Part shown: positions 12,394-64,000 of the stretch, one piece after another
Position numbering within the stretch: position 1 is the first letter of the stretch
Layout of the letters: every line of letters begins with the position of its first letter
Source of the DNA: Paragordius varius
Lineage: Eukaryota > Animalia > Nematomorpha
Length of the DNA stretch: 64,000 nucleotides
Reading direction: 5' to 3'
Assembly (NCBI GenBank): GCA_964247055.1
Contig: OZ176050.1
Location: 11,532,001-11,596,000, forward strand
The notes under the pieces: model-generated
The model's input: the letters and a program-made list of their open reading frames with translations, nothing else
Told to the model about the DNA's origin: nothing
The model's database searches: none
Made by a program: the position numbers and the translations under genes

Positions 12394-12406
12394 TTAATTA
12401 TGATAA

Positions 12407-20530: not shown

Positions 20531-20665
20531 TCCTAAATGGTCGCGCCAAATCATTATATTGTTAAAATGACGACAAAAATACAATATGTTTTCAGAATTT
20601 GGCTAAATTTATAATAGAATCTACATATTTCAAAAATAACGTTTATATTTTCAATTTATTTTTAC

Positions 20666-21654: not shown

Positions 21655-23365
21655 ATGCATTATTTAATATATGGTATATTTTTGGCCATATATTATGTAA
21701 ACGCCCAAGAATCTTACGTACCCGAAATGTTTGGGTATGTTGGAGATCCCTACATCCTTGTCTGTAATATCGCTATGGAGAAATTTGATAATTCTACGGT
21801 AAGAATTTTTTTATCCTATATTATAGTCATATTGGACTTTCAATGACACAAACATTCCATTCAACTCCACAAAATATGGATTGGAGTTTGAAGAAAGTAT
21901 ATTCACTAAAACTATTCTGTTGAATTTTTTTATATTTTCTAGATATTGTATTGTATTGCAAAATATTATTATATTATTGTAAAAATAGTCGCATAAACAT
22001 AATTATTAGTTGATTATATTAAAACCAAAAACTCTAACCCGACCTGTTTTTTAATTTTTTTGTTTGAATATTTCAATTTAAGATAGTTTCATAAATTATT
22101 TTTTGAATTACTTTGTTTAGGACCTTTCTTCTCTAAAATTTTACAAATGTTTGGATTTTTACTGGAAATAAAAAATCTCACAAAATCCGATTCTGGTACA
22201 TACACTTGCTTTCATGCCAACAAAACTATAACATCCACAAAACTAACTGTAAATGGTATGTTATTTTATCAAATTAAATTTTAAGATTCAGTTTTTTTTT
22301 AAAAAGTTTTTAGGTCTTTTTAAGGATCATTTGACAAAATACGTTTCTAAATTGGCTATTATATGTGTACACAGGAAAAAGATTATTAATATTTTTTGCA
22401 CTTATGTGCTATATCAAATTATATGTTCCGATATTTAAAACCTTATATGCTACATTTTTATACATATATAACCTGTATTTTATAGCATAATAAAATTTTT
22501 GAAAGCATATAAAATAATTTTTTATTCTTAATTTTATTCCCTAATTACTGACTTAGGTGTGTAAAATTTGTATGTAAATATAATTTTGTTGTTTTTAAAT
22601 AATGCATTTATCACCTTATCTTTGTGACATGAACCTTTATTCAGAAAATGTTAAAAACAATATAAAAAATAAGCAACATCATTGTAGAAAATTAGGAGTT
22701 TCCAAAGAAAATTACTATTTGATATTACAAAAATATTGTTATATATCTTATAAATTTTAGTGTTTATAGATATAAATAATATAAACACCGGTAAAAATTT
22801 TAATTCTTGCAATATAAGATTTGCAAATACTATGTATGGCCGTTTTAATTGTAAAATGTATTTAATTTGTGTGTAGCTTTAGAAATTATATTTGAGATTA
22901 GATGTAATCCAGTTAATATTAATTGATATTATTATTATTTTGCATTCCTTATACATTTTGAAAAACAAATGTGATTATAAATTGTTTATAGAATCTACAA
23001 AAGTAATTTTTAACCAATTGGTCATTATATTTAAAAAAGATTTAATTCGGGGGATATAATAAGTATTTACCTTTTTAGCTAATAGTTTGAAAAAAAGTGT
23101 TAAAAAGTTGGTAAAATATTTTATTGACAAATTTTACACATAATTTAAATATTTTATAATTTTATGACATCTCGCATAAGAATTCATTTTTTAGATAAAT
23201 CAATATTCAATACATCCGATTTCTCTTATGATGTACCTACGTCTAAACCTGTGACCAATGATAATTTCGCTATAACTCACACAATAAATATAAATGTTAC
23301 CGGTAACATTATAATTTTAAATAATATCCTTAAATTTGTAATATTTGTAGGTATTAAGGTTTTTT

Positions 23366-42808: not shown

Positions 42809-43907
42809 ATGAAGGATGAAACAAGCGAGAAAAAAGATGATATAAAGTTCAATCCAGATAAAAATCTACCACTAAACAATGGTACAAAACCTATTCCTTT
42901 GAATATCAACAATGGTAGTAAGGATTTAAGGCAAACCAATTATGTCAGGGAAGAAATTAATAAGGAAACCGTAACTCACGAACACATACCAATATTCGAA
43001 GCTGTTGAAAATTCTCCACCATTAAACACCAACAATTTGGATAACACAAACAATAAGAAAAATGACCAAATTAAACCTATAACAAACACTACCACAGATA
43101 ATCCTGATATCGCCAAGGATGTTTTCGAAGAACCCCTCAATGCACCAATATTTAAGCTAGGGCGTCTTATTGGTTCTGGGGCCTTTGGTATTTTACGATT
43201 ATGCACTGACGTTTCTACAGAAAAGCTTTACGCTGTAAAGCTTGAAGCGATCGATGCCAAACAGCCTCAACTTCATAAAGAATATCAAACATATTGGAAA
43301 TTACATCACAATCAAGACGTTGAGGGAAAAAATGGCGCCACTGAGAAAGAAATGAAAAGTACGGATAAAAAAGGGAATGAAACAAAAGTAGACGAGAAGA
43401 CAAACAATGAACGATTTTACACAAATTATGAAAAGGGTAAAAAACTCCGTCCAATCGGATTCCCAAAAATCTATTATTTCGGTGAATGTACTAATCGATA
43501 TAATGCATTGGTTATGGATTTATTAGGTAAGAGGAGGATTGGAAACGGAATCATTATAAAATAGTGCAACTTGCTATTCTAAAATCAATGCTATAAAATT
43601 TCCAAATCGATTCAAATTTCGGAACTAAAATCCCAATTTTAATTTTTTCCGCACAATTAAATTTAGAAAAATATATACTTTGTCCTCATCCCTCTAAAAT
43701 TTTTATTAGATCTTGTCCTAATTAAAATCCTTATGTAAGGATAAAAATCGGGGACACAATCGTTAAAGGCACACCCACTAATGTAAACTTAAACCCATTA
43801 TAACTGATTTTTTTTCTATAATTTTGTTAACACTAAGTGCACGTAAGTATACGAAAGCTGGACTAAACATAATTACATTTATATTTGGCTCTTTTAACAA
43901 ATACTTA

Positions 43908-43947
<40 letters not shown>

Positions 43948-45952
43948 GTGCATGCAAACTAATTGAAAATATTAAAATTATATCATTAGGATTGTATATG
44001 TAAGATCGAAATAGTTTTCAATTTAACCCACCAAACTAAATAAACAGTTATATATTCGTGATTATATATGTTAAAAAACAGGACCAAACCTTCAAGAACT
44101 CTTTGTAATGATGGATAAAAAGTTTTCTCTCAAAACTGTACTATTGATAGCCTTTCAAACGTTAGATCGCATAGAATTTTTACACAGGAAAGGCATTATC
44201 TATCGAGATGTAAAACCGCAAAATTTTTTAATCGGCAGAAAAAGTGAAGGAATGGATAACTTAGTTTATTTGTTAGATTTTGGACTCTCGAAAGAATATG
44301 TCATGGAAGACGGTTTGAATAACTCTTTTATAAAATAAAAATTTATATGGGAATTATTTTATTAGATAGTTTATTTCAAAAATATTTTATCCAGGTAAAC
44401 ACATTCCGTTTTTGCTGAAAAAATCTTTGACGGGAACAGCACGATACATTTCCATAAACACCCACGAAGGTGTTGAACAAAGTCGAAGAGATGATATTGA
44501 ATCTCTTTCCTATCTTTATCTGTATTTCCTAAAGGGCTCTTTGCCTTGGCAAAATATGACAGATCATAACCGAGTAACAAACAAGGAAAGGTTTATATAA
44601 TTCTTTTTAAAAGGGAAATATTGATTGAGAAAAACAAATATAAAAAATTATTTTATACTTTTAATATTACATTTGGCAAAATTTGATGATAATTCTGGTT
44701 ATATAGAATACTTTAAGGTAGATGATGTGGTACTGGTTACTATATAAATTGGATATATTTTAGAATTTTAAAGGATGATCAAAACTTTTTTATTTTTACA
44801 GAATTATATATCACAAAAATTATATTATAATAAAAAAATATGCCAGGATAGACCCATTTAATAGAGTAAGTTTTTATATTGACATATTTTCAACACAGCA
44901 TAATCAGTTGCCGCCAAAATTTGGTAAAGTCATGCAAAGTTTTGATTTTTTTAATTTATACCCACAATTAAATTAAATCACAAACACAATGGCGCTTTGA
45001 ACCTTTAAAATCTATTTGTTTATTTTATACTTATTTCTCCAGATATAGATTAATAGGCTTAAAGAAAAGGGATAGTGTTAGCAGCGAAGAATTTTTCATT
45101 AATGTCCCGTCCGAGTTTCGAACCATGTTAACTTATGCTCGTAACATTGCATTTGATGAATGCCCGGATTACGATTTTATCCGTGAATTATTAATGAATC
45201 TTTTTAATCGTTCGGGTTATACCTGCGACAATATTTTTGATTGGAATTCTGGTAATTTTCCGGACAACAGAGATGGTGGATTCATTTGTAAAAAGGGACT
45301 CTTTCAAAACATCCCAATGGTATCACCAAATGCAAAAAAGGATGGAGACCCAACAGCAAAAAATATAAACCAGCAACCACAAAACCGAAAAAATGACATG
45401 AAAAAAGCAAAAAGCCTAGATGAACTCCGTAGGACAGGGGAATTGGAGATTATACGGTATCAAAAATTAAACATTGAACTCATACATCGAGTAGACAAAG
45501 ATAAAAAGCATCCGCTGGGTCGCAATACTCCACAAGTTCAGGGTATGAAGAAAGAAACAAACGACCCAGAAAATGGCGAAGCTAAAAATGTGGTGGATGA
45601 AAAACCGAATAAAACGGATTTCGAGATTGCACGTGAAATTTTAGCCAAGCATCATCCACACAGCCCTGAAGATAATATAGCAGACGAATTTAAAAGTCAT
45701 GAAAAACAAGATAACCCCACTCAACTAACGCAAAATATAGACATGAATGCCAAAAAAAACTGCGATGAAGTCTTTAAATGTAAACGTTTAGAAGAAAAGA
45801 GAGACACATGGGAATCACTGCGAACCAAGTTGGCAGAAGAATATAGCCGAAACGAAAAACAACGCATCTTAAACAAATATTTGAATGAAACATACCCAAT
45901 AGATTTTAACATACGAAATCAAATTATAAAGGTAAATCATGTGATATATTAG
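42809..45952 (+). CDS. CSNK1G: Casein kinase I, gamma/gilgamesh-like
   Basis: Exons 42809-43526, 44082-44312, 44395-44590 and 45043-45952 join in frame. Motifs [67 protein letters not shown] and [11 protein letters not shown]. The C-terminus may extend past 45931 through a 21-nt intron. Confidence 0.93.
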
Positions 45953-47265: not shown

Positions 47266-48271
47266 TCTATATATTTAAATAAATAGAAAATGCTGGCTTT
47301 GTGAACTGTTTTCGGAAAACCGGTAGACCCATTTGAATTCAAATGAAAAAAATCATTATGAATGCCCCGACAATAGCTTCGTTCCTTTTTTGAATAAGCC
47401 CCCCACCCCGTGTGTAAAACGGTTTTTTTAAAAAAACCGAAGTCCACAGAAATCGTGTCTTTGAGACAATTTTCCGGAAAACGTGTTGGACCATTCGATT
47501 TCAAATATGATTTTTTACTTTTTTTCGATTGCGCCGAACATAGTCGGCTCGCTTTTTTAATTTAAATCCTCTTTTTACCTGCTCCCCCTGTAAAATGCCA
47601 TTTTTCCACAAGAATAATTTTTTGAATCTATTTATCGCCCAAGGAGACCAAATTTAATGAGGATTCCGGGTTGGCAAACATTTTAATCGTGCGTTTTATA
47701 TATTGTGGGTAAGGAGATACCCGCTAAAAACTGCCCGGTCATATAAAAATAGCGTGCTTTTGGGGCTAAATTTCAGAAACCTATCAGGCCATATTAGTTC
47801 AAAAGGTGCTTAAAATATTACCCGTAACAAGGCAAAGATTTAGGTCGTGCGGTTTAATCCGTTAATTAGGCCCTTCACGCACTTGCGTCACCATAGAGAG
47901 ATTTTTCAGTTTTTAGGCATTTCGAAAATCCACGAGAGCATATGGAATCAATCATGATTCCAAGTATTACCAGAATTAAGGCAAAAACTTTAATCAAGCG
48001 TTTTTTTTGTTTCACCCCTGGTTAGGGGGGTTACCCGCGTAAAACTGCGTCACCATATCGATACAGCATGCCTTTGGAGCCGAATTCAGAATACCTATGA
48101 GACTAGTTTTGAAAATTCTATGAAGCACCGTTTTGAAAATCAATGAGATCATAACTATTAAATAATAATTCGAAATAATCCACACATATGGATCACAATT
48201 TTGTTGATCCTTTTTTTCAAATAGCCCCCCCCCCCCTCAAGAAGTCCGAAGGACTTCTTCGGGCTGCATAG
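47266..48271 (+). mobile_element. Non-autonomous Helitron, same family as 12407
   Basis: 5' A|TCTATATATTTAAATAAATAGAAAATGCTG and two array units (~47707, ~48020). Candidate 3' hairpin AAGAAGTCC-GAA-GGACTTCTT (48239-48259) is followed by a degenerate CGGGCTGCATAG end. 3' boundary uncertain. Confidence 0.65.
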
Positions 48272-49224
48272 CAACCCGGGATTTTAAATGTTTAATTAAT
48301 TTCAATTATTTGTTGTATTTTACCATACGCACTGTTTTATGATTTTTTGCTTGTTTATTGATAATATCATTTTATCTATGTTAAACCGTTAAAACGGTCC
48401 TTAAAGAGAAAACTGAAACCAACTTTAGTTTCCAAAAACCATTGCGGCAAGCAATTTATATTGAACGTTTGTGTAAAACCCGATCAATTTATCATGATTT
48501 TGACAATATTGACCTTTCTTTCCTTGGCTTTATGGTTATAAAACCCAAATTTTGTATGTAAAAATATTTTTAAAGTCAAAACGATAAAACAATATGGTGC
48601 CATTTAAATTTTAAGCGAAATAATTATCTGTTTTTTTGATTGTGCATATTACAAAAAAACAAGTATGTGACATTATGAAATATAAGCTGAACGAACTATA
48701 ATCAAAGATTTTATTTTATTAGAAAAAATAAAAATACTTGAATATCTAGAACATGGTATATAAATTAATTTTTTAACATAGTTGCGCGTAATTGGGATAT
48801 CGAGATTTAGAACAAAGATAAAAGATCTGTTCTTTTCTCTTATATTCTACCTGTAAAATATCAGTTTTATTTTAACGTACCTATATATATATATGAAACA
48901 ATTTTATCTTTAACCTATCTAACTAGTGTAGAAGTTTATTCGAATACGATCTCATATTGAGTCTTTACGTTTGATTCAAAATGTTATATATTAAATTTTT
49001 TAGCATTATCTTTCAATTATTGGAAAAATTTAACTTTATCTATAATTATTATATATATATATATATAATTATGGGATAAAGTTAAGTGTATTTATTTTTA
49101 ATTTTAAAACTTATAATTACAACAAAACAAACCTATTTCATTTCTTCCCCATACTTTTAGTTTATTTCAATTTTTTATTCGGTAAAAATAAGTCGAATAA
49201 CTCTGTTGTATATCATAGTGCGGG

Positions 49225-50791
49225 ATGGGTTCTATCAACTATTCGTCCAAATTATTTTTCGGTATTTTCATTCTTACCCTTTTTTAAATTAGATTGGGTT
49301 TATACTCAATACAATTATTATAAGTACAATAAATTATATTTTTATTTTTATGGTGTAGTTCTTTGCGGCATAATTTTTGCCAACGCAAATCCTGGGCTCC
49401 CAGTCAGAAAAAGTGATGGCTCTGACACCAATAATTTGTATCGCAGAAATCATTACAGATCACTCTACAATAGTAACAAAAATGAGGATCAATTGATTTC
49501 GGCCAATGCCGCACTCAAAGGTAGGGATGATGAAATATCCTTAGGATCTAACCGGAATGTCAGGCGTGACAGTTTACAAGATAGTAGTAGCAAATCATCC
49601 AGTCATAAAAGAAACAAAGATTCCAGCCTTCAACATCACCGTAAGAAACCAACCAAATCTGATAAAATGATTATGGCAGATAAGAGCGGAGGGCCCCCTA
49701 GCGATTTATACGGACCGGATCCAAACCGTGGTGGCGGCGGCTTACCGCCTCAACATCATATAGATCCGAGTTATGGGCCTATCCCTAGCGGCCTCTTAAA
49801 CAGTTATAACCGACAACAGGCGCCTGAGGATGTCATTCCCAGTGATGTGCTCATGGTCCCCGGATCTATTTGTCAAACTCATGACATTACAGACGGCATT
49901 TTGAGTGACCCCTCAGATTGTTCCAGGTACTTTGTTTGCGCGTTCGGCCAAGAATTTTCGAAGTCATGTCCGTTAGGCTTGTTGTGGAACCAAAAAACGC
50001 ATTCTTGTGATTGGCCCGAAAATGTAACGTGTTCCAACAAAAACCGTAAAATAACTTAAATATATTTGTCCTGCATACTTTTCAATTTGTTATTTGGCTA
50101 AATATTTATGTTTGCATAGATATGATGGAGAATATGGTTGACTTAAGATGTGGTCGCGACAAAATTAGCTGTGCCTCTGGAAACCAATGTATATTCCTTG
50201 ATCAATTATGTGACAAAAAAGTCGATTGCCTAGATACATCCGATGAAATTACTTGCGGTAAAAAAAGTTCTATTTATTTTAACTAATAAGTAAAATGTCT
50301 GATTACAAAAGTTCCTCAATCATTCCTGCTTGTTATGATGTAATGGCCCAAATCTCGTCGGTGTAGCTCTTATTTGTATAGTAAAGGTAACAGTTACAAT
50401 ACACCATCGATCTTTAAAATGTATAAATGGTTTTTAACAACATGATCAATTTTCTTATAATCCAATTTTTACCCTTACTTACAAGAAAAGCGCATCCAAT
50501 ACGTTTTTAAATGAGAGTTTTTGTGGTGGTATGTCGACATAATTTATGCTATTCAACAAATTTAAAGGTTTATTTAATAAATTTTTAGATCCCTACAAGG
50601 TTGGTGTGTTGCCAGGGAAAGTAGTTTCAGTCGATGGGGGTACAATTATACCCTTTTGCGGTTCAGGCCATGCTTTATGCACGAGCCGAACTCAATGCGT
50701 AATAATTTCACAGCTTTGTGATGGTGTCGAAAATTGTCCAGATGGATCAGACGAAGCGGAAGAAATGTGCCTTAAATCACCAAGAAAATAA
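49225..50791 (+). CDS. Secreted protein: low-complexity N-region, CBM14 (peritrophin-A) chitin-binding domain and two LDLa repeats
   Basis: Exons 49225-49261, 49359-50045, 50120-50257 and 50589-50791 join in frame. Signal-like MGSINYSSKLFFVLCGIIFANA; CBM14 DPSDCSRYFVC...CPLGLLWNQKTHSCDWPENVTC; LDLa CGRDKISCASGNQC...CDKKVDCLDTSDEITC and CGSGHALC...CDGVENCPDGSDEAEEMC; stop TAA. Confidence 0.85.
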
Positions 50792-51078: not shown

Positions 51079-51856
51079 TTAACTGAAATATTTTTCAAAT
51101 AAAGATTTTAATTTTGAATCTTTGACTGGTTGTTCATGGTACTCAGATTGTGATGAAGGAAATAAAATTTTAGATTTATAGGATAAATCAGGGTCGTCTT
51201 TTGGGTTAGTTCCAACCAAAGTGTTAAACAATTTCGTAAAAAAGCTTTCACGTGGATGCTGCGGTTCATGTAAAGCAATATCATCTTTAACATGACTTAA
51301 TTCATTTTTTATCATTGATTCGATCGGCCTTTGATGCATACTCGAAAAATCTGTATGGTCTTCCGTAACAACAGTGCCATCTGGTTTACGGATAGTTACA
51401 ATTTCTTTTATTTTATCCCCACTGGTTTCAATTACTTTAATTCGCTCATTCCCTAAATGGTCTCGTAATACACTTTTTGAAAAAGAAAACTAAATGGTAA
51501 AAATAAAAATAGTTACTGTGTGAATCTTGGGTGTATCATTATCTTGAAATACAGAATCGGTTTTATTATACTAAAATAAATTGGAATGGTATTACTTCGG
51601 GTTTAAGCATTTGATCTCTTAACGAACTTGGATTATTGGAATTAGAAAATGAAGAAAGACCTATATTTATATATGCTCAAACTTTGTTCTGGTGCTATAT
51701 CAATTTCATTGCTTAGTTGGTCAAATATTTTAAATATATCATTTGTAATTATTTTAATATCATTTCCAAACCAATCGGCTTGTCCAAAGTTTCTATAATT
51801 GATTAATATATAAATTGTTAAAACTTGTCAAAATCTTTTTCAAACCAATCAAACAT
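51079..51856 (-). CDS. HAX1: HAX1-like (HCLS1-associated protein X-1), 223 aa
   Basis: Exons 51856-51825, 51792-51683, 51660-51596, 51570-51517 and 51489-51079 total 672 nt of open frame after removing GT-AG introns of 32, 22, 25 and 27 nt. Motif SLRDQMLKP resembles HAX1 LRDSMLKYP; FSFSKSV and TIRKPDG resemble the HAX1 C-terminal region. Confidence 0.72.
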
Positions 51857-51864
51857 TTTAACAG

Positions 51865-52173
51865 ATGGAGTCTATCTCGCAAGAGTTTATTAGTGCAAAA
51901 AATCCTTTAATAGCTCGGAATTTGCAATTATCATCGGGATTAAAATTTGGCGTTGACTTTTTGGGTTACTTAGGTTTTTTGTTTTTAATATAAGGGGATC
52001 CAAAACACTTTCACTCGCTTTTTATGTTTTTCCTGGAAAAAGAAAAGAATTTACCAGTTTTAGAGCTTATAACTCTTATTCGATTGGCAACTATAGTTAA
52101 AAAAATATTTGTATATGTATATAAGGAAAATGATGAATTTACTTATTTAACATTTAATTATATTGAACTTTAA
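51865..52173 (+). CDS. TSEN34: tRNA-splicing endonuclease catalytic subunit, TSEN34/Sen34-like, catalytic domain only (95 aa as modelled)
   Basis: Exons 51865-51973 and 51995-52173 (288 nt) with a 21-nt intron that contains an in-frame TAA. Gives SGLKFGVDFLGYLGDPKHFHS...RLATIVKK, with the putative Tyr/His/Lys triad present. The 5' end may have additional upstream exons. Confidence 0.85.
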
Positions 52174-52177
52174 TAAA
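52169..52177. terminator. Overlapping candidate poly(A) signals for the convergent TSEN34 and REEP5 genes
   Basis: Plus-strand AATAAA at 52172-52177 overlaps the TSEN34 stop, and minus-strand ATTAAA lies at 52169-52174. Weak evidence in such AT-rich DNA. Confidence 0.35.
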
Positions 52178-52180
52178 TAT

Positions 52181-54436
52181 TCATTCATATAATGTTTTTA
52201 TTGGATCTGCCCTTATTTCACTCATTCTGCATGTAATGGCATTCTTGTATTGGTTCTTGTTAATAACCTTGTATTGGTGCTTTGAGGAAAAAAGAGGTAT
52301 TTGTTTTATAACATATTTGTATAATATGTTTGCTCCATTGTTTTCCATTGGCAAGAGGCACCATACAACAACGCTAATCTAGAATTAAGTTAATTTTAAG
52401 TTAATCGTTTAATTGGGTTATATTTGGCAATGTAAAAGATTATAACTGAGCAATTAAGGATTGGTGCTTAAGTACGTAAATTTTGGCATTGTTTTTATAA
52501 AACATGGAAGAAATTTAACAATTAGCCTTGTGCTGATAGCGATGGTCATAGGCTGGGCCCTTTGTTGGGTACTTGGTTATTTTTTTTTTCAAATTTCCTC
52601 ACCAAAAAATCAAGGGCCAAAACAATAATTATGCATAGCTATGTGACTTTGCAGATATTAATACTCCAAACAAATACATCAAAAAATTAATAAGATATTC
52701 AGTGCCATAAAAAGCACTTTTAGGGCCGTGGATTGAGTATCACTACTTTAAGGGCTATTTGTCTCTTTTAATTAAAACTATTTTTAAATGGAGCCAAATA
52801 ATTTCTGCTTGGTTATAAGATTCAGGCGACTTAAAAAGTTATATCTTACACAACATGTTGTTTGAAATATCAATATTTTTTAGATTTTTTAATATCAAAA
52901 ATAACAAAAAATTACTAAATAAAATTCCGGATTCTATTAACAATCCTTTATATAGAATAGTATCGGGAAAACAAAAAAGTAAATCCTACTGCGAAATTTT
53001 ATATTAGTATTTTAGCATTAGAAAAAAAAGTTTTATTGCAATATTATATTTTTGTTTATCAATATCATTTTTTATTTGAATCCATAACGCTTTACGTATT
53101 TCCTTAAATAGGCATAACATTTTTTAAAAATAATATTTAGATGACATTAATATTTACTTTACCCATAGTTTGTTTCACACGTAAAACCCATATCAAAACA
53201 TGTTAAACATCTCAATGATTGTGGTTGACTAACATTTTATTTAAACTATTTTTAATATAATGTTACCAAATTATTTATACCTTTAAGAGATGATAGACTG
53301 GGAACCAATCTAAAAAATTGGAACATAGATATTCACAAAAGCTAAAAGTTGCGAAAACTATCCAATAAGCCAACCATTGTTTTGATTTGTCAATACTTTC
53401 GCTTTCTATGGAACATATCCTATTCATGCATGCAAATATATATTTTAGCTAATAGTAAGATCGTTAAATATGGATTTCTCTCTTAATTATATTTGCTAAT
53501 TGGCCTATTTATAGCGATTTGTTTACAAACCAATATGATAGATATATCATTATTTTTGTAATATTAAATTAAATAAAACGAAATCGATTCGTGTTTTAAA
53601 GAATACTTCAATAAAATCTAAATAAGCTATCGTAAAAAGAATTTAACATTTTAATCCATATTAAATATTATAAAGCAAATGCATTTTTTAATTTGACTTA
53701 CGAACAATAAACGGGATAGAAAAAGCCGATGAAAGCACTAATGATTGGCGCAGCATGTCCCAACACAATTTGATACACAATGAGAATTGAAATGCAACCT
53801 AAAATAATTATTTTGTTAAAATATTAATTGTATTCAAATTATCATTTATGCTACTGTTATTCGTCCAAATAATATTAGAATTAATTTAAATTATGTGTTA
53901 ATATTTTATTTTATTCATGTATTAATAAAAATTTTATACACTAACCATTTAATTGGTTTAAATGAACAGATCATGTAGTATGTGGAGCCAACACATTGGC
54001 TTGAAAAAAAATCAAGTTGTCTTGAAACCAAATTAAATAAAGATATGATATTTAAAAGAAAAAAATATAAAAAATCTCTTCTCGATTAGGATGATGTTAC
54101 TGCATCCGAAACATTCTAATATTAGTAGTTTAAATGTTGTGGGAATACAGTTTTGGCTTTTTATATCATTGTGTTTTTTAAAAGGAACTCCCACTGTCTT
54201 TTTTTGACGGAATTAATATGAAATATATATTGCCTTAATTTAATTTAACTATTTATGAATATAATTGGAAACAATAAAATAATTTATAGGTAAAAATTTA
54301 TTATTAATGTATTTTTGGCTTAAAATCAGGATCGATTGAATAAAAAAGTTTATGGCTATATTGCAATATACTTTCTTAAATATTGACAAGACATACCTAG
54401 AAACAGAATATTATAATTTAAATTGAAGAGATCCAT
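52181..54436 (-). CDS. REEP5: Receptor expression-enhancing protein 5/6 (TB2/DP1/HVA22, Yop1 family)
   Basis: Exons 54436-54397 (MDLFNLNYNILFLG, tentative first exon), 53798-53702 (...FIGFFYPVYCS), 53419-53281 (IES...QWLAYWIVFATFSFCE...WFPVYHLLK) and 52378-52181 (VWCLLPMENNGANILYKYVI...KHQ) give 474 nt in frame. Confidence 0.88.
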
Positions 54437-54718
54437 AAAAATAAAGAAATAAATTAATTTAAGAAAGATAAATCATTAAATATGAATATGATTGTTACAT
54501 TAAGTTGTAAACAGTAGTGTGTATAATCATGAGTGCAACTTTATTAAATTAAAAAAAACCTAAGTTTATACCCATAGTTAAAAAGATTTATTTTTATAAT
54601 TACCACTCCAATACCGTTTACAATAGTTTTCTACGACAGAGCCATTTCAAATATGAATTGTGAGAAGTCTCTATGATATTGGGCCAAATTTAAAAATGTG
54701 CATATTATTACTCTTTAA

Positions 54719-56368
54719 CACTTCGATTCAAATTGGGGTATCTAAATACCCCAGACCTTTTTCAAATTAGTATTCTTGAAAAACTACCCAATAGAATGGC
54801 CCTAATTTAAATTTATGCTTCTATCTTTATAAAAATTATATAATTAAACCAAAATAACTTAATGAAATTTAGTTTTGAAAAAAGATTCTCATCTCGAATT
54901 GGTTGGCGCCAGAATTATTTTTGAATTTTTTTTACCAGAATACATATTATTGTTAAAGATTGTACAATCCCACCTCCTGTAAACATATCATTTAAAGTAT
55001 TTTCCGTTACGAAGCATTTATTTTGTTGTTATGGAAGATTTTTCAGATAATTTTGATAGTAGCAGAGATTATAATGTGGATGACTCTTCATCTTCGAAGT
55101 CAAGTATAAAATTATTTTATTTAGATTATAATATAATGGAAAATTTAGCAATCCAGTATGATTGGTTTTATCCCCGGGCTCAAATCAAATTTTAGGACCC
55201 ACTTACAACATTTAATTCTATCATAACCTATGACGTAAAAATTTGATTATGAAAATAGGAAAACTATTATCTATATACAAATTTAGGTATCTGGATTGCT
55301 ATGGGCTTGCGCAAATACATGGTCCCTTAAATAATCTTTTTCGGCTTCAGAACGGTTAGCAATTATATTAATGTGCCAAAAAGGTATATATACTTATATA
55401 TTCTACAAGGTCCTATTTGCGTCGAAGATCTGTTTACAAAAAATCTAATATTTTGCCAAGCATGTCAACATATATCCTCTTAAATTGTTTGCACAAATTA
55501 TGAAAATAATCTAAATAAATTATTTGGAAATAAGATTTTAGTATACTATATTTATCGATCATGGATCGAATTTCACACCTATTAAACCAGATAAATTTTG
55601 AAGGGTTTAAAAATGAAAAATTAGCATTATTTTTTAAACAAACACAAAAAAATTATCTAATAATTGGCACTAAAATAGAGCCCGGGCCGCGGTAAGTGTC
55701 ACTGATCTAATAATAAACGATTTACTTCTAGAAGGCAAAAAGCAAGTTTTGATTTATTTTGATCGTAGAATAAATAAAAATACATGATTAGATATAAAGC
55801 ATCAAATATAAGATTATTCGGTAGAACTCTGGGAGATCAAGATTTATATTAATTTTTATGACCTGTTGACAAAACCATCTTGGTGTATATGATTCTGTTT
55901 CTTTCATGATATTACTATTTTATAGTAAACCTAAATGTAAAATTTACTTCAGAAAGTACGTGGAATGATTTCAATTTAAGCAAGTCTCACAAAATTTATA
56001 AGACTAATATTATAGTTGCTTCTCGAGATTCAATAACTGTCCAATATCTTACATAAGGTTATTCATTATGTCTTTATAAGCCTATAAATTAATAAAACTT
56101 ACTTTTAAAGATTTTTTCTTTCTGTTATGGCGATGCTAAACATAAATAATAGATATTTGTAAATCGATTGTCTGAAGTATGTAGAGACTTGAACTAAAAT
56201 GTAAATTTCCTGTTGTATTTAGTTAATTATGCAATAATAAATATAAAATAAGCGATAGAACTTAAAAACAATAGGTGTTTAGTAAATTATTTGCTTTAAA
56301 AAGGCCTGGGGTATCCAACTACCCCAATTTGAATCGAAGGACTAAAATGAATGTGTTGAATCCAAGTG
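54719..56368 (+). mobile_element. Decayed piggyBac-like element
   Basis: TTAA|CACTT ... AAGTG|TTAA ends with inverted subterminal TGGGGTA..TACCCCA hairpins. The interior has an acidic EDFSDNFDSSRD stretch, DPLTTFNSIIT and GIWIAMGLRK fragments loosely resembling a piggyBac transposase, with many stops. Confidence 0.55.
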
Positions 56369-56633
56369 TTAAGTGCATTATTAAAAAAAATGAAAATGTG
56401 TAATTTTATGGTCATACACTTTTGCCGACGAAATATTTTGCTAGATTTCTTTTATTAAACTAAAAGTGGTGAGTAAACTTATATAATGATAACAATTCAG
56501 CGTCAATTCACTTTAAAGCATTTATTTTTAGTAATACCAATTAAATTTTAACTAAAATACTTTTTATTAAATTTTTTTATTAATATATAGGAACACGGAA
56601 TATGGCCAAAATCCATTATTGAATGATTTGAAA

Positions 56634-57836
56634 CAGGGGTGGTCAACATAAATGACTTCGCGGGCCACATTTTAAACTAAAAACTTTCGGCGGGCCGCAT
56701 TAAAAATATACATCGGCAAAAAGCCATAATACAAACCCCGACCGGCAGAACTAATAAATTTTCAATACCGAAAGGTGTTAGACAGGGATGTTGCCTCTTA
56801 CCATACTTGTTTAACATTTGTATAGAAATGATCATAAAAGTAGATGAAGGTACTGAAAGCTTAAGGATAGGGGGAGAATGATTAACAATCTAAGGGTCGC
56901 AAATCATACGACACTGATCGCAGATAATGTAGTTAAAATAATATAATAAGGTTAGTAAGAGAAGAAAGTAAAAGATATGGATTGTACCTCAATCCTAAGA
57001 AAACCAAAGTTATGAGTTTATTAAAAAACGAACCTAATATAAGCATAGACAACACCCCAGTTGAAATAAAAATTTCTTAGTCTCTCTAATTAACGGCTCC
57101 TCCACGCCAGATATTAAACACCCCATAGCATTAGAAAAGTTAGCTTTGAACGTTGACTAAATTATAGAAAAGTAAAGATATCACTATCAAAACTAAAGTA
57201 AGAGTTATGAAATGCATGGTTTTTCCGCTAGCGGCTTATGCTGCATAATGGAAATTAAAACTTTATAATAAATTAAGGATTTCAACTTAATAATGTGGTG
57301 TTGGAGGAGAATGTTGAATGTAAAGTGGTCGTCGGTCTGACAAAGTTAAAAATGAATCGATGAGAAAAAAATTAAATAATGAGAGTAATTAAAATATAAT
57401 AAATGGGAAGTATACGTATATAAGGCACATTTTAAGAAGGACATATCTTGATAAAGATCTAATTTTTAGGTTGAAGGGTAAATAAAAAAGGAAAACGGAT
57501 ATAAGATGGCGGGACATTATAAAGAATGATCTGGTAGAACTATAGGCGAATTAAAATAGAATGGGAAAGAAACAAGAGTCATTTTAATTTTCATGCGTCG
57601 AACCCGACCTAAATAAATACCTAACTACCCTATTATTAAATATTTAATTAGATTTAAAACATAAAACTATATAATGGAAAAACAGTATAACATTTTCTAG
57701 TTCGTTGCCAATTATATAGACTTATTCTGGGAATTTGTTTAAATATCAATCTTCCTGAGACTTTATGAGCCTACTTTTGCAATTTACGGATTTCCAAATT
57801 TTTCGCGGGCCACACATAAGCCGCGTTTTGGACATC
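56634..57836. mobile_element. hAT-type MITE remnant interrupted by a LINE fragment
   Basis: Left end CAGGGGTGGTCAAC with GCGGGCCACA/GCGGGCCGCA motifs. Similar motifs at 57800-57830. Right TIR degraded and no TSD confirmed. Confidence 0.5.
56760..57560 (+). mobile_element. RTE-clade (BovB-like) LINE reverse transcriptase 3' fragment, decayed
   Basis: Fragments read KGVRQGCCLLPYLFNI, IGGRMINNLRVANHTTLIAD, EESKRYGLYLNPKKTKVM, KTKVRVMKCMVF and WCWRRMLNVKW, with frameshifts. Confidence 0.85.
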
Positions 57837-59714
57837 CAAAAGGTAGTGAAGTATTAAGACTGTTAAATATCTTATGAACCAAAAAATCTCGTCCAAAATA
57901 ATGAAATAAATAATTATTTAAAATTCCAAGTGAAGTAGTAAAGGATTTGAGATTCAGTATGTGGAATATGCATTCTATTCCAACTTCTTGATTTAACCGA
58001 AACTATGTCATATCCATGTTTTTGTCGATGGAAAACTAGTGTCATATTTATTTATATCTAATAACTTAATAACATGAATTGAAACCGAAACTTGCTGTGG
58101 TCGGTATTAATTCTCTGGTTCCAGTTTGACATTTAAAAAAGGCGTTTTCGTATAAAATGGTTATATCACCAAATTAAATTTGGTTCCAAATCCAGCGTTT
58201 CTTCTGTAAAAAAAGGGGTTTTTGATTTCGGTCCATTCTTTGCCCAGCGGTTCTAATTTCTGTACATTATAATTTAGAATATTCAAATAAGCTAAAATGA
58301 ATAAATAGCTTAAAATGTACATTATAAGCCACATCTATGGTGGGTTACTTTTTACTAAATGTAAAAAATTTCCGTGTTTCAAAAAGATTAAAATCATACT
58401 TTAATTATTCAAATAAAATATAAAACATAAATAAAACAGGCGAGCATTGCATTAAGTTTTTTCATTAAAAGCTTTGACGCAAAACCCAATGTGTGCTCGT
58501 CTATAAGAATCAAGACTTTATTGCCATTTAAACAAGAAGATAAAATTTTATAAAAGAGCTTTAAAAAAACATAGCGTCCGAAATCAGGGGATATAAAAAA
58601 ATAAATTAGGAAATCATATATATATATATATCCTGATATAAAAATGTATCAGGATTATCATGGTTTTGGTTTTGGCCCCGAGATAATATTGTATAAAAGA
58701 TTTTTTATACCGTTTCTATCATGTCTCAAAATAGTATGAAGTTAACAAATTAAATTAAATATATGAAAAAAGTATTTATGTGTTTGATTTAAGAGGACTA
58801 ACCCATTTTAGATAAGGCAAACTTTTGGAACCTACATCTACAAAAATTTATTTTTTTTTAAATTTTTTTTTTGCTTATGTAGTTTATATATTTTAGTGAA
58901 AATTTTTGGAATAAATCATTTAGCTTTCATAAATAATTTATTCTAAAAAATATGCGCAAATTTTGCCATTATTGAGATGGAAAACCAACACAAAAGCGTA
59001 AATAACTTTCTAAAACTCTTAATGGCCAAAACCAAAAGCACCATGATAATATTGATGTAATATCCTATCAGAAAATATTTCATCAAATTATATTTCTTAG
59101 TGGACACTGTCTTTGATAAATCTTATTATTAAAAGATGTTGTTGTTATATTATATAGAGATAAAATTTTCAGTTTTATTCTAGTTTAAGACTATAGCGCT
59201 TTTACTAAAAACAAACAGCTGATTTTTCAAAAATATAAAATCTATCAAAATATATTCGGGAAAGTTTCAAAATTAATTTAAACAAAATAATATTTTGCAT
59301 TTATGAGCCACCATTTGTTATTCAAAAATTTGCAAAAAGTATATAATTTATTAAATACGATTTACTATCATAATATTATTGATGTTATTTGGAATTTCCC
59401 AGTCGAAGATTTACAAACTTTTTAGATATTTATTTAAAATGATAGTTTCTTAACAATATATGACCTTCAGTTTTCTAAGGGCATTAAATTTAATATTAAA
59501 AATATTTAATTAGGCCTAAGTTCAAATATGTTTTCTTTAACCTTTGCGCATGATACAAAATAATTATTTTAAAAAACAATTTAAACATGCAAACAACTGT
59601 ATATTATTATAGTTGAAAATATAATTTTCGAAAGCTCTCAATGTACATTTCCCCAACCAAATTTATATTTATTGATTAAATTTCAGGTTAGTTTTAACTC
59701 ATCATATGACCTTT

Positions 59715-61990
59715 TCACTTTTTTGTCCTAGCTTACATATGGGGGTAATTTTATATTTCAGAATTTATTAATAAACTATAGTTTTGAAAGTTATTTATTA
59801 AAATATCAGCCATTGTTTAAATAAATTATATAAAAAGCTTATTTTACAGTTTTGTGCCTAAATCTTCAGCTTCAAACAAAATATTTCAACAAACAGCTGA
59901 TTTTAAAATCAAAATATATTTCGTTTTTGCTTGCAAAATGTACCCTAAAAACTGTTTAAAGTTAATTATTTATATTTCCTAATGAAAATATACATTTGTT
60001 TGTCTGTTGCATTAGTGGTTTGAAAAAATTCATACAAAAAATGGCCGCAAAAAAGTTTGGGATGAATATCTTAATCCATATTTTTTATAAAAAAAATTGG
60101 ATATAGAGTCGAGGCTAAGTATATTAAAAATCGGCTAAATACTTTAAATACTTTTTAAGATATTTAAATTAATCGCTCAAGGATTTTTTTACCTATGCAA
60201 GTATTGCAATTTATGTTTTTTGTCTGTATTGGAAATTGTAGTGATGATAATATTTTCATAGACTTATTTATTTTTTTGCATATGCAAATAAGATATCTAT
60301 TAGCTATTTACATATATAGCTTTATAATCATGCAGTGACATCATGGATTGTCCTTAATTTATATTTGTTTTTTTGATACATGTAATATACCTTCAAAAAA
60401 AATTCAATATAGAACCCGATTTTATAATAAATGTATTATCATCTTGTATTATACTAGCGTTGTGGTCGAACCCAACATAACATATATAAAATGACCTCTA
60501 AAGATAATGGAGTGTTAATCGTGTTTTGGAGCTATCTAGGGACTTTAAAAGTTTAAGAGGTGCACAAATTTATTTTTTATCGAGTACAAGAATAAAAATT
60601 GATAATAAAATTTTACCCACAGGCAAAACAGCAGTTTATTGACTATAAATTCCGGGATTCCAAATTGTAATCTCATAATACTATAATAAAGTGTTAAAAC
60701 TAATAAACTTTAAAATAAATTATTATAAAATTTTGCCACATCAAGTGAAAATTTAAACCCATAATTAGATACTAGAAGTTAGCAACCGTTTGACTCATAA
60801 TCAAAAAGCAAATTGTTTATGATGATATTTTAATTTTGATAATCTAAAGTAAACTCCATAATATTAAAGATATTTTATGGTGAACTTACAAGTGTTTCAG
60901 CTGTTTAAAGCATGGCCATAAATTATGTACAAGATCTACCACCAGAAGGTGGTTATAAAATATTTGATGTAGCGAGAAAAAAGTGTGCCTCTAAATACAA
61001 TGGTTTTGCTATAACTATAATGATAGGTTGGTTCTTTTTATCAGTCGCAATATTTCATAGTTTTCTAGCTCTTCATTTTATGAATAGAGAACAAGATTAC
61101 AAACAGTATTTGTTGCTAATATTAGATTTTTATATACGGATTTGAATGATGCGAAAATTGCATTAATGCCATTGTATACTGCAGAAATGGACAGAGTGTA
61201 TGTTAATTTTAATAATTAAGGTTCTTACGACATTTAAAGAATAAGCGCGAAAATGAGCGCATATTAATGAAGGATGTGCCTAATTGGAAAGTTGGGCATG
61301 TATTTTCCGATCCTATATTTAAAACATTACCCGAGGATTACTACTTTTCGCCTTCACACGAAGAATTTTATTCGGCAGCCGCCGGTAAATATGCTATGGA
61401 TAAATTTATTGATTTAATTATGTAATTAATAAATTGTTTGCGTTGTTATCATATAAATATCATATTTTTTAAATATAACCTAAGATAACAGAACCTGATG
61501 AGTTGTTTTTTGACTAGATTGAGCTTTTGTATTCCGTTGGTGGAACAACTTTTTAAGATTTTAAATTATATATTATTACTGTTTGGATATTTCTCGACTT
61601 TACTTTAAAAATCTTCAGTTAATTGGCGCAAAAAGTTTATGATCTCTTAAAATTGCTAAGGGTATTTTATGCTTTTAATTTCAATATAGAGGCGTATAAT
61701 TTGTAAAAGAATAAATATATTGGCACGATTTGGTTAACTTTTTTTATTTCACTATTTTGTCCTAGTTTACATATTGGCGTTGTTTCATATCCCAACAATT
61801 TAATAAACTACAGTTTGGAAAGTTATTTAAAATTTATTTATCAAACATTGTGTTCATGAATTAGATAAAAAAGCTTGTATTTTTTACACTCTTGTGACTT
61901 CAAGAGTCTAAAATTGGACAAAACACGATCGAAACAAACAGCAGTTATTTAAATCAATATATATCAAGTTTTTGCTGGTAAGTTGTCTAT
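59715..61990 (+). repeat. Pair of ~250-bp dispersed direct repeats (~59715-59960 and ~61745-61990) flanking NDUFA13
   Basis: Shared ttttgtcctag(c/t)ttacatat, taataaacta(t/c)agttt(t/g)gaaagttattta, aaaaagctt and aacaaacagc. Family not assigned. Confidence 0.6.
60912..61425 (+). CDS. NDUFA13: NADH dehydrogenase (ubiquinone) 1 alpha subcomplex subunit 13 (GRIM-19), 148 aa
   Basis: Exons 60912-61002, 61027-61105, 61126-61197 and 61221-61425 (447 nt) separated by introns of 24, 20 and 23 nt. Motifs QDLPPEGGY, IALMPLYTAEMDRVFLR, LMKDVPNWKVG and PIFKTLPED. Confidence 0.93.
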
Positions 61991-62025: not shown

Positions 62026-63519
62026 CTAGCTGGCCCTGTCACGCTTTGCTGTTACGCAGTTTCACCGATAATTATTCTTAATAATTAGCAATAAGGGGTA
62101 ATGGAGATTCATATATAATAAAAAAACATTTAATAAAATTATTCTTTTACGGGTTTTTTGCATAGGCTAAAATATTTACTCGAAATTGACCATATTTAAA
62201 CTCTTCCTTATTAAAATTAATATTCAACTATCATTGGATTTATTTTAAGATTTTCGTTTTACGAAATCATGGTTAAAAGTTTTAGTTTAAAATGTTTATA
62301 CAGCTGGGATCAAAGGATATAAAAAGTAAATCATTTGTGGTCCCTTTTTAAAGGTAAGAATGATATTACACAAATTCCCGAGAAATGTATAACTTAATTC
62401 GTATGGCTTCCCAAGTTTTTTATAAATTAGCTCCAAAACCACGCCATTTTTGTATGGCCTCTCAGTTTAAACCGGTAAACTCCTACCCATATACCTATGT
62501 GGAAAAAGCGCTGAGTTAATTTCTTTGCCTTTATAAGGCAAATATTTGGAATCTTCTTTGATACCATCATAGGTTATTCGAAAAGATACTTTAACGCTAA
62601 ATAATCGTTATATGATGGCGTATTTTTAGAGGCCCTCAATTAACGGCTAATAAAAAACGCCTGACCTTTTTTACCTAGTTACGGGTAATATTTCAAACTT
62701 TTAATGAGCTCACATGGATTCTTAAATTTTCCGAAAATTAGCACCAAAACAACGCAATTTCTATATAGTGGCGCAGTTTTTGGCAGGTACCCCCTAACCC
62801 AGGGGCAGGTAAAAAGTGCTGGGCAAAATTTTTGCCATTATATGGGGAATATCTGGATTTATCATGGATTTCATATGTACTAGATTCATAGGTTTTCTGA
62901 AATTTGGTTCGAAAGGCATGCTATATCGATCACGGGTAGCCCCCTAACCAGGGGCGAAAAAAAATCGCTTATGTTTGCCTTAATTCGGGTAATACCTAGA
63001 ATCATGATTGATTTTATATGCTCTCGTTGGATTTTCGAAAAATTGCCATAAAACCAAAAAGTCATTCTATGATGGTGCAATCAGGGCGTGAAGGGCCTAA
63101 TTAACGGCTAATTTTAAAAAACCGTACAACCTAAATTTTTGCCTTGTTACGGGTAATATTTTAAGCACTTATTGAACTTATATGGCCTGATAGTTTTCTA
63201 AAATTTAGCCCCCAAGGCACGCTATTTCAATATGATAGGGCAGTTTTTAGCAGGTATATCCTTACCCAGCAGCCTATATAAAAAAACGCACGGCTAAAAT
63301 TTTTGCCTTTTAACAGGGAATATCTGGAACCTTCATCAAATTTTTACGGTCTCATACCCTGGGCGAAAAATACACGGGGTGGGCCCGAAGGAACCTTTTA
63401 AAAAAGGGCGAAGCTATTGTCGGAGCATTCATTAATGATTATATTTTTCCGATATTTAGATTAAAATGGGTCTAAAACAGAACACAAACCACGACTTTCC
63501 ATTTTTATAAATTAATAGA
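62026..63519 (-). mobile_element. Complete non-autonomous Helitron
   Basis: On the minus strand: 5' A|TCTATTAATTTATAAAAATGGAA, 3' imperfect hairpin GTAACAGC-AAA-GCGTGAC then AGGGCCAG-CTAG|T. Inserted between A and T with no TSD. Same internal tandem units as 12407 and 47266. Confidence 0.85.
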
Positions 63520-64000
63520 TTTTCCTGTTGAATTAGCGAGTAAAAAATTTATAAAAAATGACGGCAAAAAAGTTTGACAGAGGATTTTTTTACATATTAA
63601 AAAATTTTGTATAATGCTTCTAAAAGGCTAAAGAAAGCCTATTTTATAATTCGACTTAATAACTTAAATAATTTTTAAGATATTTTAATTCAACTCGCTT
63701 TGGGATATAAAATTACCCCAAAAGGTAATGGAATGTTAAATAATGCCAGTATATAACCGTCTAAAAATTAAATCAATGCATCCTGATTTAAAAACCCATC
63801 AATAATCTGGTGGATGCCGATTATTAATAAGCTGTTTATGAACGAATGCATATAGTCTCATTTAAAAAATTGTTTTTGCATGCATTATACCAGATAATTT
63901 TTTTTTGAGGGCTTTGCTTTCTAAATCTTATACAACACACACTTTTAGAACGCAAAAAATTTTTATTTGTTATAAATCCAAATATTTAGCCCACTTAATT

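What the first reader, a model, noticed from the sequence alone, without database searches (positions are those of the whole stretch)
51079..61425. A class of ultra-short (20-32 nt) spliceosomal introns in an animal genome that is not otherwise compact
Seen: at least nine GT-AG segments of 20, 21, 22, 23, 24, 25, 27, 28 and 32 nt restore open frames or conserved spacing in four unrelated genes (NDUFA13, TSEN34, HAX1-like and the Ig/FN3/DB gene at 21799). For eight of the nine, retention gives a stop or frameshift. Known: introns this small are typical of ciliates, microsporidia and nucleomorphs, and among animals of dicyemids; they are far below the usual minimal metazoan intron size (roughly 40-70 nt in model animals). 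Inference: this lineage has a spliceosome adapted to micro-introns even though its genome is TE-rich and has long introns, so genome reduction alone does not explain them. Standard gene predictors would mis-annotate these genes.
Basis: partly seen in the sequence, partly recalled or inferred. Interest (0 to 1): 0.93.

Follow-up and report, generated by a model that had tools for sequence, protein, structure and literature searches.

The report
Ultra-short introns in a hairworm genome
Ordinary genes in this AT-rich, repeat-rich animal genome (a relative of horsehair worms) are interrupted by real introns only 20-32 bases long, a size published for just two other animal groups and one that standard gene finders miss.

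Summary
The nine GT-AG segments (20-32 nt) exist as described. The three in NDUFA13 (24, 20, 23 nt) are true introns with near certainty. They sit at the same codon and phase as the 40-, 40- and 41-nt introns of the annotated Gordionus montsenyensis orthologue, and two of them match 90- and 71-nt introns of an insect orthologue. Independent DNA samples hold them without length change. Variants are denser in them than in exons, where 10 of 12 are synonymous. The 21-nt TSEN34 segment restores exact collinearity with the Pfam endonuclease profile. The four HAX1-like segments rest on an ORF chain (null about 0.5%), and the 28-nt Ig segment on domain spacing only. ORF-joining alone is not above chance in this window. 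Neighbouring genes have 82-902-nt introns and the window holds repeats, so the genome is not compact. The best match and conserved gene order point to Nematomorpha. No RNA data could be laid, so splicing itself is inferred. Introns under 30 nt are published only for dicyemids and myxobolid myxozoans; I found no report for hairworms. This scan already noted and followed up the same class on other DNA of this genome.

The parts
60912..61425 (+). NDUFA13 (GRIM-19) gene. Four exons: 60912-61002, 61027-61105, 61126-61197, 61221-61425. Spliced product 148 aa.
   Evidence: Pfam GRIM-19 hits exon 1 (26.3 bits) and exon 4 (56.2 bits). The spliced protein is 46% identical to Gordionus XP_065316060.1 over 148 aa with one gap, and is collinear with 16 homologues.
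61003..61026 (+). 24-nt micro-intron, phase 1 (GTTTTGCTATAACTATAATGATAG). In frame if retained.
   Evidence: All 16 homologues lack these 8 residues. Same column and phase as the 40-nt Gordionus intron and the 90-nt Planococcus citri intron. Four of the 7 differences between the two sequence versions fall in these 24 nt.
61106..61125 (+). 20-nt micro-intron, phase 2 (GTATTTGTTGCTAATATTAG).
   Evidence: Same column and phase as the second 40-nt Gordionus intron. Retention gives a frameshift and a stop. Two SNPs and no indel in other DNA samples.
61198..61220 (+). 23-nt micro-intron, phase 2 (GTATGTTAATTTTAATAATTAAG).
   Evidence: Same column and phase as the 41-nt Gordionus intron and the 71-nt P. 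citri intron. Present without gaps in contigs of three DNA samples.
51865..52173 (+). Short TSEN34-like tRNA-splicing endonuclease gene. Exons 51865-51973 and 51995-52173; 95 aa.
   Evidence: Pfam tRNA_int_endo matches profile positions 11-31 in exon 1 (14.7 bits) and 35-85 in exon 2 (19.2 bits). Each is under the 27-bit cut-off; together they are collinear.
51974..51994 (+). 21-nt micro-intron, phase 1 (GTTTTTTGTTTTTAATATAAG), inside the Y-x-G-D-P...H motif.
   Evidence: After removal exactly three residues (L, G, D) fill profile positions 32-34. Retention meets an in-frame TAA.
51079..51856 (-). 'HAX1-like' gene (name unverified). Five exons: 51856-51825, 51792-51683, 51660-51596, 51570-51517, 51489-51079. 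223 aa.
   Evidence: Splicing gives one ORF from ATG to stop. From random AG anchors, a chain of at most 4 micro-introns reaches this far in 0.5% of cases. No Pfam family and no homologue found. The Atlas search gave only a weak Mlf1IP lead.
51793..51824 (-). 32-nt micro-intron of the HAX1-like gene.
   Evidence: GT-AG ends; needed for ORF continuity. No orthologue evidence.
51661..51682 (-). 22-nt micro-intron of the HAX1-like gene.
   Evidence: GT-AG ends; needed for ORF continuity. No orthologue evidence.
51571..51595 (-). 25-nt micro-intron of the HAX1-like gene.
   Evidence: GT-AG ends; needed for ORF continuity. No orthologue evidence.
51490..51516 (-). 27-nt micro-intron of the HAX1-like gene.
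   Evidence: GT-AG ends. A multiple of 3, but it ends in an in-frame TAG.
21799..21826 (+). 28-nt candidate micro-intron in the first Ig domain of the Ig/FN3/DB gene.
   Evidence: Joins open frames of 57 and 51 codons in phase 0, giving Cys-x13-Trp. Pfam detects only the downstream half of the Ig domain (22087-22281). This is the weakest of the nine.
52181..54436 (-). REEP5 (TB2/DP1/HVA22) gene, 157 aa, with ordinary introns of 598, 282 and 902 nt. Serves as the contrast class.
   Evidence: Pfam TB2_DP1_HVA22, 47.4 bits. Gene model. Intron 1 is at the same position as a 57-nt intron in Gordionus.
43100..45949 (+). Casein kinase I gamma-like gene with ordinary introns: 43527-44081 (555 nt), 44313-44394 (82 nt), 44591-45042 (452 nt).
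   Evidence: PDB CK1-gamma alignments place the exon pieces at chain residues 80-154 and 158-213. Sequence and coordinates.

Best explanation
The segments are genuine U2-type (GT-AG) spliceosomal introns that have shrunk to a lineage-specific minimum of about 20-30 nt. The host genome is most likely a nematomorph (horsehair worm).

They are removed from the pre-mRNA by intron definition, using only a GTW donor, a WAG acceptor and probably a branch adenosine at a fixed short distance from the acceptor (position -7, counting the G of AG as -1).

Small housekeeping genes (NDUFA13, TSEN34, the HAX1-like gene) carry only such introns. Neighbouring genes (REEP5, CK1-gamma) keep introns of 82-902 nt.

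Shown here:
- Position and phase identity with orthologous introns of normal or near-normal size.
- Presence of the segments in independent DNA samples.
- Non-coding-like variation inside the segments.
- Coexistence with long introns and repeats.

Inferred:
- Actual excision from RNA.
- The branch site.
- Any change in the spliceosome.
For: 1. Removing 24, 20 and 23 nt gives a 148-aa GRIM-19 protein collinear with 16 homologues.
2. The Gordionus montsenyensis orthologue (XP_065316060.1, GCA_954871325.2) has exactly three introns of 40, 40 and 41 nt. They lie at the same alignment columns and phases: residues 31, 57 and 81, phases 1, 2 and 2.
3. The Planococcus citri orthologue has 90- and 71-nt introns at the positions of window introns 1 and 3.
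4. Logan contigs from three DNA samples span all three segments with no gaps and no joined form.
5. There are 6 variants in 67 intron nt against 12 in 447 exon nt, and 10 of the 12 exonic ones are synonymous.
6. TSEN34: Pfam profile positions 11-31 and 35-85 become contiguous only after removal of the 21 nt.
7. HAX1-like chain: null of about 0.5%.
8. The micro-introns have 19% GC against 31% in their exons, and an A at position -7 in 8 of 9.
9. Ordinary introns lie in adjacent genes.
10. Nematomorph origin: Gordionus is by far the best hit (154 bits against 100 for the next). REEP5 lies upstream of NDUFA13 in both genomes. GC is 26% here against 26.9% published for Gordionus (bioRxiv 10.1101/2023.06.26.546503).
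Against: - No RNA evidence. The RNA-labelled runs of the same species label laid nothing at 80% likeness or more. The remaining holders look like DNA: contigs are continuous across the introns and upstream sequence, and depth is even.
- No protein or transcript of this species was found in the protein collections.
- GT-AG ORF-joining is not enriched over other dinucleotide pairs in the window.
- The HAX1-like and Ig introns therefore lack independent support.
- The A at -7 rests on nine introns and a post-hoc choice of position.
Confidence: 0.88

Rival explanations
1. Some of the nine are chance GT-AG joins. The four HAX1-like segments or the 28-nt Ig segment may not be introns: the gene model could be wrong, or the HAX1-like upstream exons could be spurious.
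For: ORF-joining by 18-35-nt GT-AG segments is about as common as for arbitrary dinucleotide pairs. Most other ORF-joining candidates in the window flank low-complexity junk frames. The HAX1-like gene has no homologue and no Pfam hit. The Ig half-domains are not detected.
Against: The HAX1-like chain, from an ATG through four micro-introns, is matched by only 0.5% of random anchors. Its introns share the low GC, and three of the four share the A at -7 seen in the validated ones. Removing the Ig segment gives a canonical Cys...Trp spacing.
Confidence: 0.2
2. The genes are pseudogenes carrying small insertions, or the segments are assembly indel errors.
For: Retention breaks the frame in eight of nine cases. 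No transcript was seen.
Against: The same segments, at the same lengths, occur in contigs of three DNA samples with their own SNPs. Every one starts with GT and ends with AG. The three in NDUFA13 coincide with orthologous introns. Exon variation is 10/12 synonymous.
Confidence: 0.02
3. The true introns are longer (over 50 nt) and use more distant splice sites, so the micro-segments are only parts of them.
For: No RNA data exclude alternative sites. AT-rich sequence offers many GT and AG dinucleotides.
Against: For NDUFA13, any longer intron would delete residues that align without gaps to Gordionus and to 15 other homologues on both sides of each junction. For TSEN34, the alternative 30-nt intron would delete three profile positions, including the conserved Tyr.
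Confidence: 0.03
4. The segments are removed at the DNA level (programmed elimination, IES-like), not by splicing.
For: Tiny precisely bounded elements are excised from DNA in ciliates.
Against: DNA contigs of all samples keep the segments at full depth, and no joined form was seen. The ends are GT-AG, and the positions are those of spliceosomal introns in other animals.
Confidence: 0.01

Closest known systems
Ultra-short introns of Dicyema japonicum (Dicyemida)
   Same: Animal GT-AG introns under 30 nt. Splice signals are reduced to about GTa...AG, with weakly conserved A residues just upstream of the AG. The host is a parasite (PMC13644364; PMC6736024).
   Different: In Dicyema the short class dominates a small, reduced genome. 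Here micro-introns sit beside introns of 82-902 nt and repeats. The lineage also differs: Ecdysozoa here, Spiralia there.
Ultra-short introns of myxobolid myxozoans (Henneguya salminicola, Thelohanellus kitauei, Myxobolus rasmusseni)
   Same: Median intron lengths of 22-27 bp, conserved positions between conserved exons, and short introns clustered within the same genes (PMC13644364). The size range matches the one seen here.
   Different: Those animals are cnidarians with fast-evolving genomes of about 20-200 Mb. That paper surveyed 51 animal genomes and reported no other lineage. Its text does not mention nematomorphs.
Minimal-intron class of Gordionus montsenyensis (Nematomorpha), as annotated in RefSeq
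   Same: NDUFA13 has the same three intron positions and phases, REEP5 is the same neighbour, and the AT-rich GT...TAG style is the same.
   Different: The orthologous introns are 40-41 nt there against 20-24 nt here, a consistent difference of about 17-20 nt. REEP5 intron 1 is 57 nt there and 598 nt here.
Tiny introns of ciliates (Paramecium, Stentor), nucleomorphs and microsporidia
   Same: Introns of 15-30 nt are spliced by a conventional U2-type machinery, with the branch A a few nucleotides from the acceptor (as summarised in PMC13644364).
   Different: These are not animals. In them nearly all introns are tiny, whereas here the distribution is bimodal.

Membership tests
U2-type GT-AG spliceosomal introns | GT at the 5' end and AG at the 3' end | tested here: met
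   All nine segments.
U2-type GT-AG spliceosomal introns | Position and phase shared with introns of orthologous genes | tested here: met
   NDUFA13: 3 of 3 shared with Gordionus and 2 of 3 with Planococcus citri. Not testable for TSEN34, the HAX1-like gene or the Ig exon, because no orthologue was retrieved.
U2-type GT-AG spliceosomal introns | Absent from the mature mRNA | not testable with these tools
   RNA-labelled runs laid nothing, and the other runs behave as DNA.
U2-type GT-AG spliceosomal introns | Branch-point adenosine upstream of the acceptor | tested here: inconclusive
   A at position -7 in 8 of 9 (p = 0.0012 for one pre-chosen position, roughly 0.015 after allowing for the positions inspected). 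A [CT]TAAT motif occurs in several.
Animal ultra-short intron class (dicyemid / myxobolid type) | Intron length under about 30 nt with reduced splice-site motifs | tested here: met
   Eight of the nine are 20-28 nt and one is 32 nt. Donor is GTW with no +5 G preference; acceptor is WAG.
Animal ultra-short intron class (dicyemid / myxobolid type) | The short class is the genome's dominant intron size, in a compact genome | tested here: not met
   In this window REEP5 has introns of 598, 282 and 902 nt, CK1-gamma of 555, 82 and 452 nt, and the Ig/FN3/DB gene of kilobase scale. 16% of the window is repeated within itself. A genome-wide histogram was not possible.
GRIM-19 / NDUFA13 | Pfam PF06212 above its gathering score, full-length collinearity | tested here: met
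   56.2 and 26.3 bits against a cut-off of 25. Alignment.
tRNA-splicing endonuclease catalytic domain (TSEN34-like) | Pfam PF01974 above its gathering score | tested here: inconclusive
   14.7 and 19.2 bits on the two exons, each below the 27-bit cut-off, but collinear. No PDB hit with either piece.
HAX1 | Sequence similarity to HAX1 proteins | tested here: not met
No Pfam family, no homologue at E <= 0.001, and only a weak Atlas lead to Mlf1IP.
Nematomorpha (origin of the genome) | Closest relatives, shared gene order and base composition | tested here: met
   Best NDUFA13 hit is Gordionus (154 bits; the next are arthropods at 100 bits or less). REEP5(-)/NDUFA13(+) adjacency is shared. GC is 26% against the published 26.9%. 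This rests on one gene pair only, so the species is not identified.

The most novel reading that the evidence does not exclude
Horsehair worms would be a third, independent animal lineage with introns under 30 nt. They would be the first in Ecdysozoa and the first in a large, repeat-rich genome. The minimal intron length appears to have been reset within the phylum, from about 40 nt in Gordionus to about 22 nt in this species, at the very same intron positions.

A consequence would follow for gene content. [quoted passage not shown]
Probability: 0.5. Interest if true: 0.8.

Novelty: new member of a known kind. Interest (0 to 1): 0.72.

Why it matters
- **Count and range of origins.** It would raise the number of independent origins of sub-30-nt introns in animals from two to three. 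All three are parasites. This one would be the first in Ecdysozoa.
- **Compaction is not required.** It shows that intron miniaturisation does not need genome compaction.
- **A comparative system.** A sister lineage has 40-nt introns at the same sites. That pairing allows a within-phylum search for what sets the lower size limit of the spliceosome.
- **Annotation and gene loss.** Gene predictors and read aligners with a minimum intron of 20-40 nt will break or miss such genes. The HAX1-like and TSEN34 genes here are examples. Gene-loss claims for this phylum should be rechecked.

Tried and rejected
- **RNA evidence.** Two run searches and two read layings gave only DNA-like contigs. Nothing was laid from the RNA-labelled runs of the same species label, even at 80% likeness. 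X6 is low-depth and does not cover the introns.
- **Own-species transcripts or proteins.** The representative search, a search with the Gordionus protein, and searches with the HAX1-like and TSEN34 pieces found none.
- **Gordionus orthologues of TSEN34 and the HAX1-like gene.** They are not within the 20-kb locus around its NDUFA13 and could not be fetched otherwise.
- **A purely statistical proof.** Comparing GT-AG ORF-joining with the other 255 dinucleotide pairs gave no clear enrichment. I rejected it as a test and report it as a caveat.
- **PDB searches with the TSEN34 pieces.** No hits.
- **CK1-gamma short gap.** The short gap between its ORF pieces turned out to be an ordinary 82-nt intron.
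- **Rfam.** No RNA family in the window.
- **Cunha et al. 2023** (nematomorph genomes) is not held in the library, so I could not check whether it mentions intron sizes.
Full report
**Setting.** The window has 22-33% GC, about 26% overall. The finding names nine GT-AG segments of 20-32 nt in four genes. I read the sequence and confirmed that every segment is there with the stated ends and lengths.

**NDUFA13 (60912-61425, + strand).** Unspliced, the frame breaks after 77 codons. Removing 61106-61125 (20 nt) and 61198-61220 (23 nt) gives an intact GRIM-19 protein. Pfam GRIM-19 matches profile positions 2-39 in the first exon and 79-130 in the last. An alignment with 16 homologues showed no gap at either junction. 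It did show 8 extra residues (GFAITIMI) that no homologue has. These correspond to a third GT-AG segment, 61003-61026 (24 nt), which stays in frame if retained. Another note on this window had listed it. With all three removed the product is 148 aa.

**Orthologous introns.**
- A profile-free search of 1.84 billion representatives with the last exon gave P0002 as the best full-length hit. P0002 is the RefSeq protein XP_065316060.1 of 'Gordionus sp. m RMFG-2023'.
- It is encoded on a 64.4-Mb chromosome of GCA_954871325.2. That length equals the N50 published for Gordionus montsenyensis (bioRxiv 10.1101/2023.06.26.546503).
- An exhaustive search for GT/GC-AG structures that reproduce that protein from its 571-nt gene range found one solution, with introns of 40, 40 and 41 nt.
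- In a codon-level alignment the window's three segments and the three Gordionus introns fall at the same columns and phases: residue 31 phase 1, residue 57 phase 2, residue 81 phase 2.
- The next-best homologue, from the mealybug Planococcus citri, has two introns of 90 and 71 nt. They lie at the columns and phases of window introns 1 and 3.
- Three small segments coinciding exactly with introns of two other species cannot be chance. This also settles the 24-nt in-frame segment as an intron.

**DNA-level checks.**
- Logan contigs of four runs from three samples cover the gene and its upstream flank at even depth, so they are DNA. They span all three segments with no gap and no joined form. 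This excludes assembly indels and DNA-level excision.
- The runs carry SNPs: 6 in the 67 intron nucleotides against 12 in the 447 exon nucleotides. Ten of the 12 exonic ones are synonymous in the spliced frame.
- The gene is therefore under purifying selection, and the segments evolve like non-coding DNA.

**TSEN34 (51865-52173, + strand).** Pfam tRNA_int_endo matches profile positions 11-31 at residues 15-35 of exon 1, and positions 35-85 at residues 2-50 of exon 2. After removal of 51974-51994 (21 nt), exactly three residues fill profile positions 32-34. Retention meets a TAA. An alternative 30-nt intron would delete three profile positions. Each piece scores below the Pfam cut-off, so family membership is likely but not formally met. 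PDB searches with the pieces found nothing.

**HAX1-like gene (51856-51079, minus strand).** Splicing out 32, 22, 25 and 27 nt gives a 223-aa ORF from ATG to stop. I found no homologue and no Pfam family. The Atlas search gave only a weak lead to Mlf1IP, so the name is unverified. As a null, I asked how far upstream an ATG-started chain with at most four 18-35-nt GT-AG introns can reach from random AG anchors. Only 0.5% reach the observed 367 nt.

**Ig exon (21799-21826, 28 nt).** The segment joins open frames of 57 and 51 codons and gives a Cys-x13-Trp spacing. Pfam detects only the downstream half of the domain. This is the weakest case.

**Is it more than chance?** As a control I counted, for all 256 pairs of bounding dinucleotides, the segments of 18-35 nt that join two open frames. 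GT-AG is not a clear outlier, ranking 4th to 38th. Most extra GT-AG candidates flank junk frames. Open-frame restoration alone is therefore weak evidence in this AT-rich DNA. The conclusion rests on the homology, variation and path tests above.

**Not compact.**
- REEP5 (54436-52181, minus strand; Pfam TB2_DP1_HVA22) has introns of 598, 282 and 902 nt.
- Its first intron is at the same position as a 57-nt intron in Gordionus.
- CK1-gamma has introns of 555, 82 and 452 nt, fixed by alignment to solved CK1-gamma chains.
- 16% of the window is repeated within the window, and there is a reverse-transcriptase fragment.
- Micro-introns and long introns largely segregate by gene.

**Signals.** The nine micro-introns have 19% GC against 31% in their exons. 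The donor is GTW without a +5 G preference, and the acceptor is WAG. An A sits at position -7 (G of AG = -1) in 8 of 9. This suggests a branch adenosine at a fixed short distance from the acceptor, but the sample is small and the position was picked after looking.

**Origin of the genome.**
- Gordionus is by far the best NDUFA13 match: 154 bits, against 100 or less for arthropods.
- REEP5(-)/NDUFA13(+) adjacency is shared.
- GC matches the published 26.9%, and that genome is reported as 64% repeats.
- At 46% protein identity this is a different, fairly distant nematomorph. I cannot name the species.

**RNA.** Both run searches listed RNA-labelled runs of the same species label with none of the sampled words. 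Laying three of them at 80% likeness gave nothing. Splicing is therefore inferred, not seen.

**Known or new?** A 2026 survey of 51 animal genomes found introns under 30 bp only in myxobolid myxozoans and in Dicyema japonicum (PMC13644364). Full-text searches that pair hairworms or Nematomorpha with introns returned nothing relevant. The Gordionus genome paper does not mention introns. Cunha et al. 2023 is not held. Earlier agents of this scan reached the same reading on other pieces of this genome. The present work adds three things: orthologous intron positions in two species, population-variation evidence, and the negative control.

**Verdict.** These are real micro-introns, near certain for NDUFA13, likely for TSEN34 and the HAX1-like gene, and possible for the Ig exon. 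They lie in a non-compact nematomorph genome. This is a new member of a known kind. Interest is high for intron and spliceosome evolution and for annotation of this phylum.

Noticed in passing
window 60962-61095 and 61269-61383: All DNA samples hold two versions of NDUFA13 at roughly equal depth. They differ at 7 of 134 and 4 of 115 positions. These may be alleles kept in every sample, a recent duplicate, or an unusual (clonal or polyploid?) genome state.
   Followed up: partly
window 51856-51865 and 52173-52181: Near-zero spacers. The start codons of the HAX1-like gene (-) and TSEN34 (+) are 8 bp apart, and the stop codons of TSEN34 (+) and REEP5 (-) are 7 bp apart. Their UTRs and promoters must therefore overlap neighbouring coding sequence.
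   Followed up: partly
window 51856-51864 and 60888-60911: Acceptor-like motifs lie just upstream of start codons: TTTTAACAG directly before the TSEN34 ATG, and GTGTTTCAG 14 nt before the NDUFA13 ATG. This could mean 5'-UTR introns or spliced-leader trans-splicing. Not tested.
   Followed up: no
L002:1142-1198 vs window 53799-54396: REEP5 intron 1 is at the same codon and phase in both nematomorphs, but is 57 nt in Gordionus and 598 nt here. The size class of an intron is therefore not conserved by position.
   Followed up: yes
window 60932 and 61480: Run X6 (another organism label, low depth) matches the window perfectly but diverges abruptly upstream of 60932, inside the first NDUFA13 codons, and upstream of 61480. 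This may be a structural variant, a second copy or chimeric contigs.
   Followed up: no
window 49046-50788: A gene combines a chitin-binding Peritrophin-A domain (CBM_14) with LDL-receptor class A repeats. Further upstream lies a large Ig/FN3/DB-module gene (about 21.6-39 kb). DB modules fit a nematoid or ecdysozoan origin.
   Followed up: partly
window 7692-9867, 12402-14177, 17511-20965, 47263-48107, 62503-63690: Dispersed repeats with copies inside the window cover 16% of its bases. A weak reverse-transcriptase fragment lies at 56681-56878.
   Followed up: partly
runs X7-X9: RNA-labelled runs with the same species label as the DNA runs hold no sampled words of two window stretches. Nothing from them is 80% or more alike to NDUFA13. 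The label may cover a different (cryptic) species, or the contigs may have been filtered out.
   Followed up: partly
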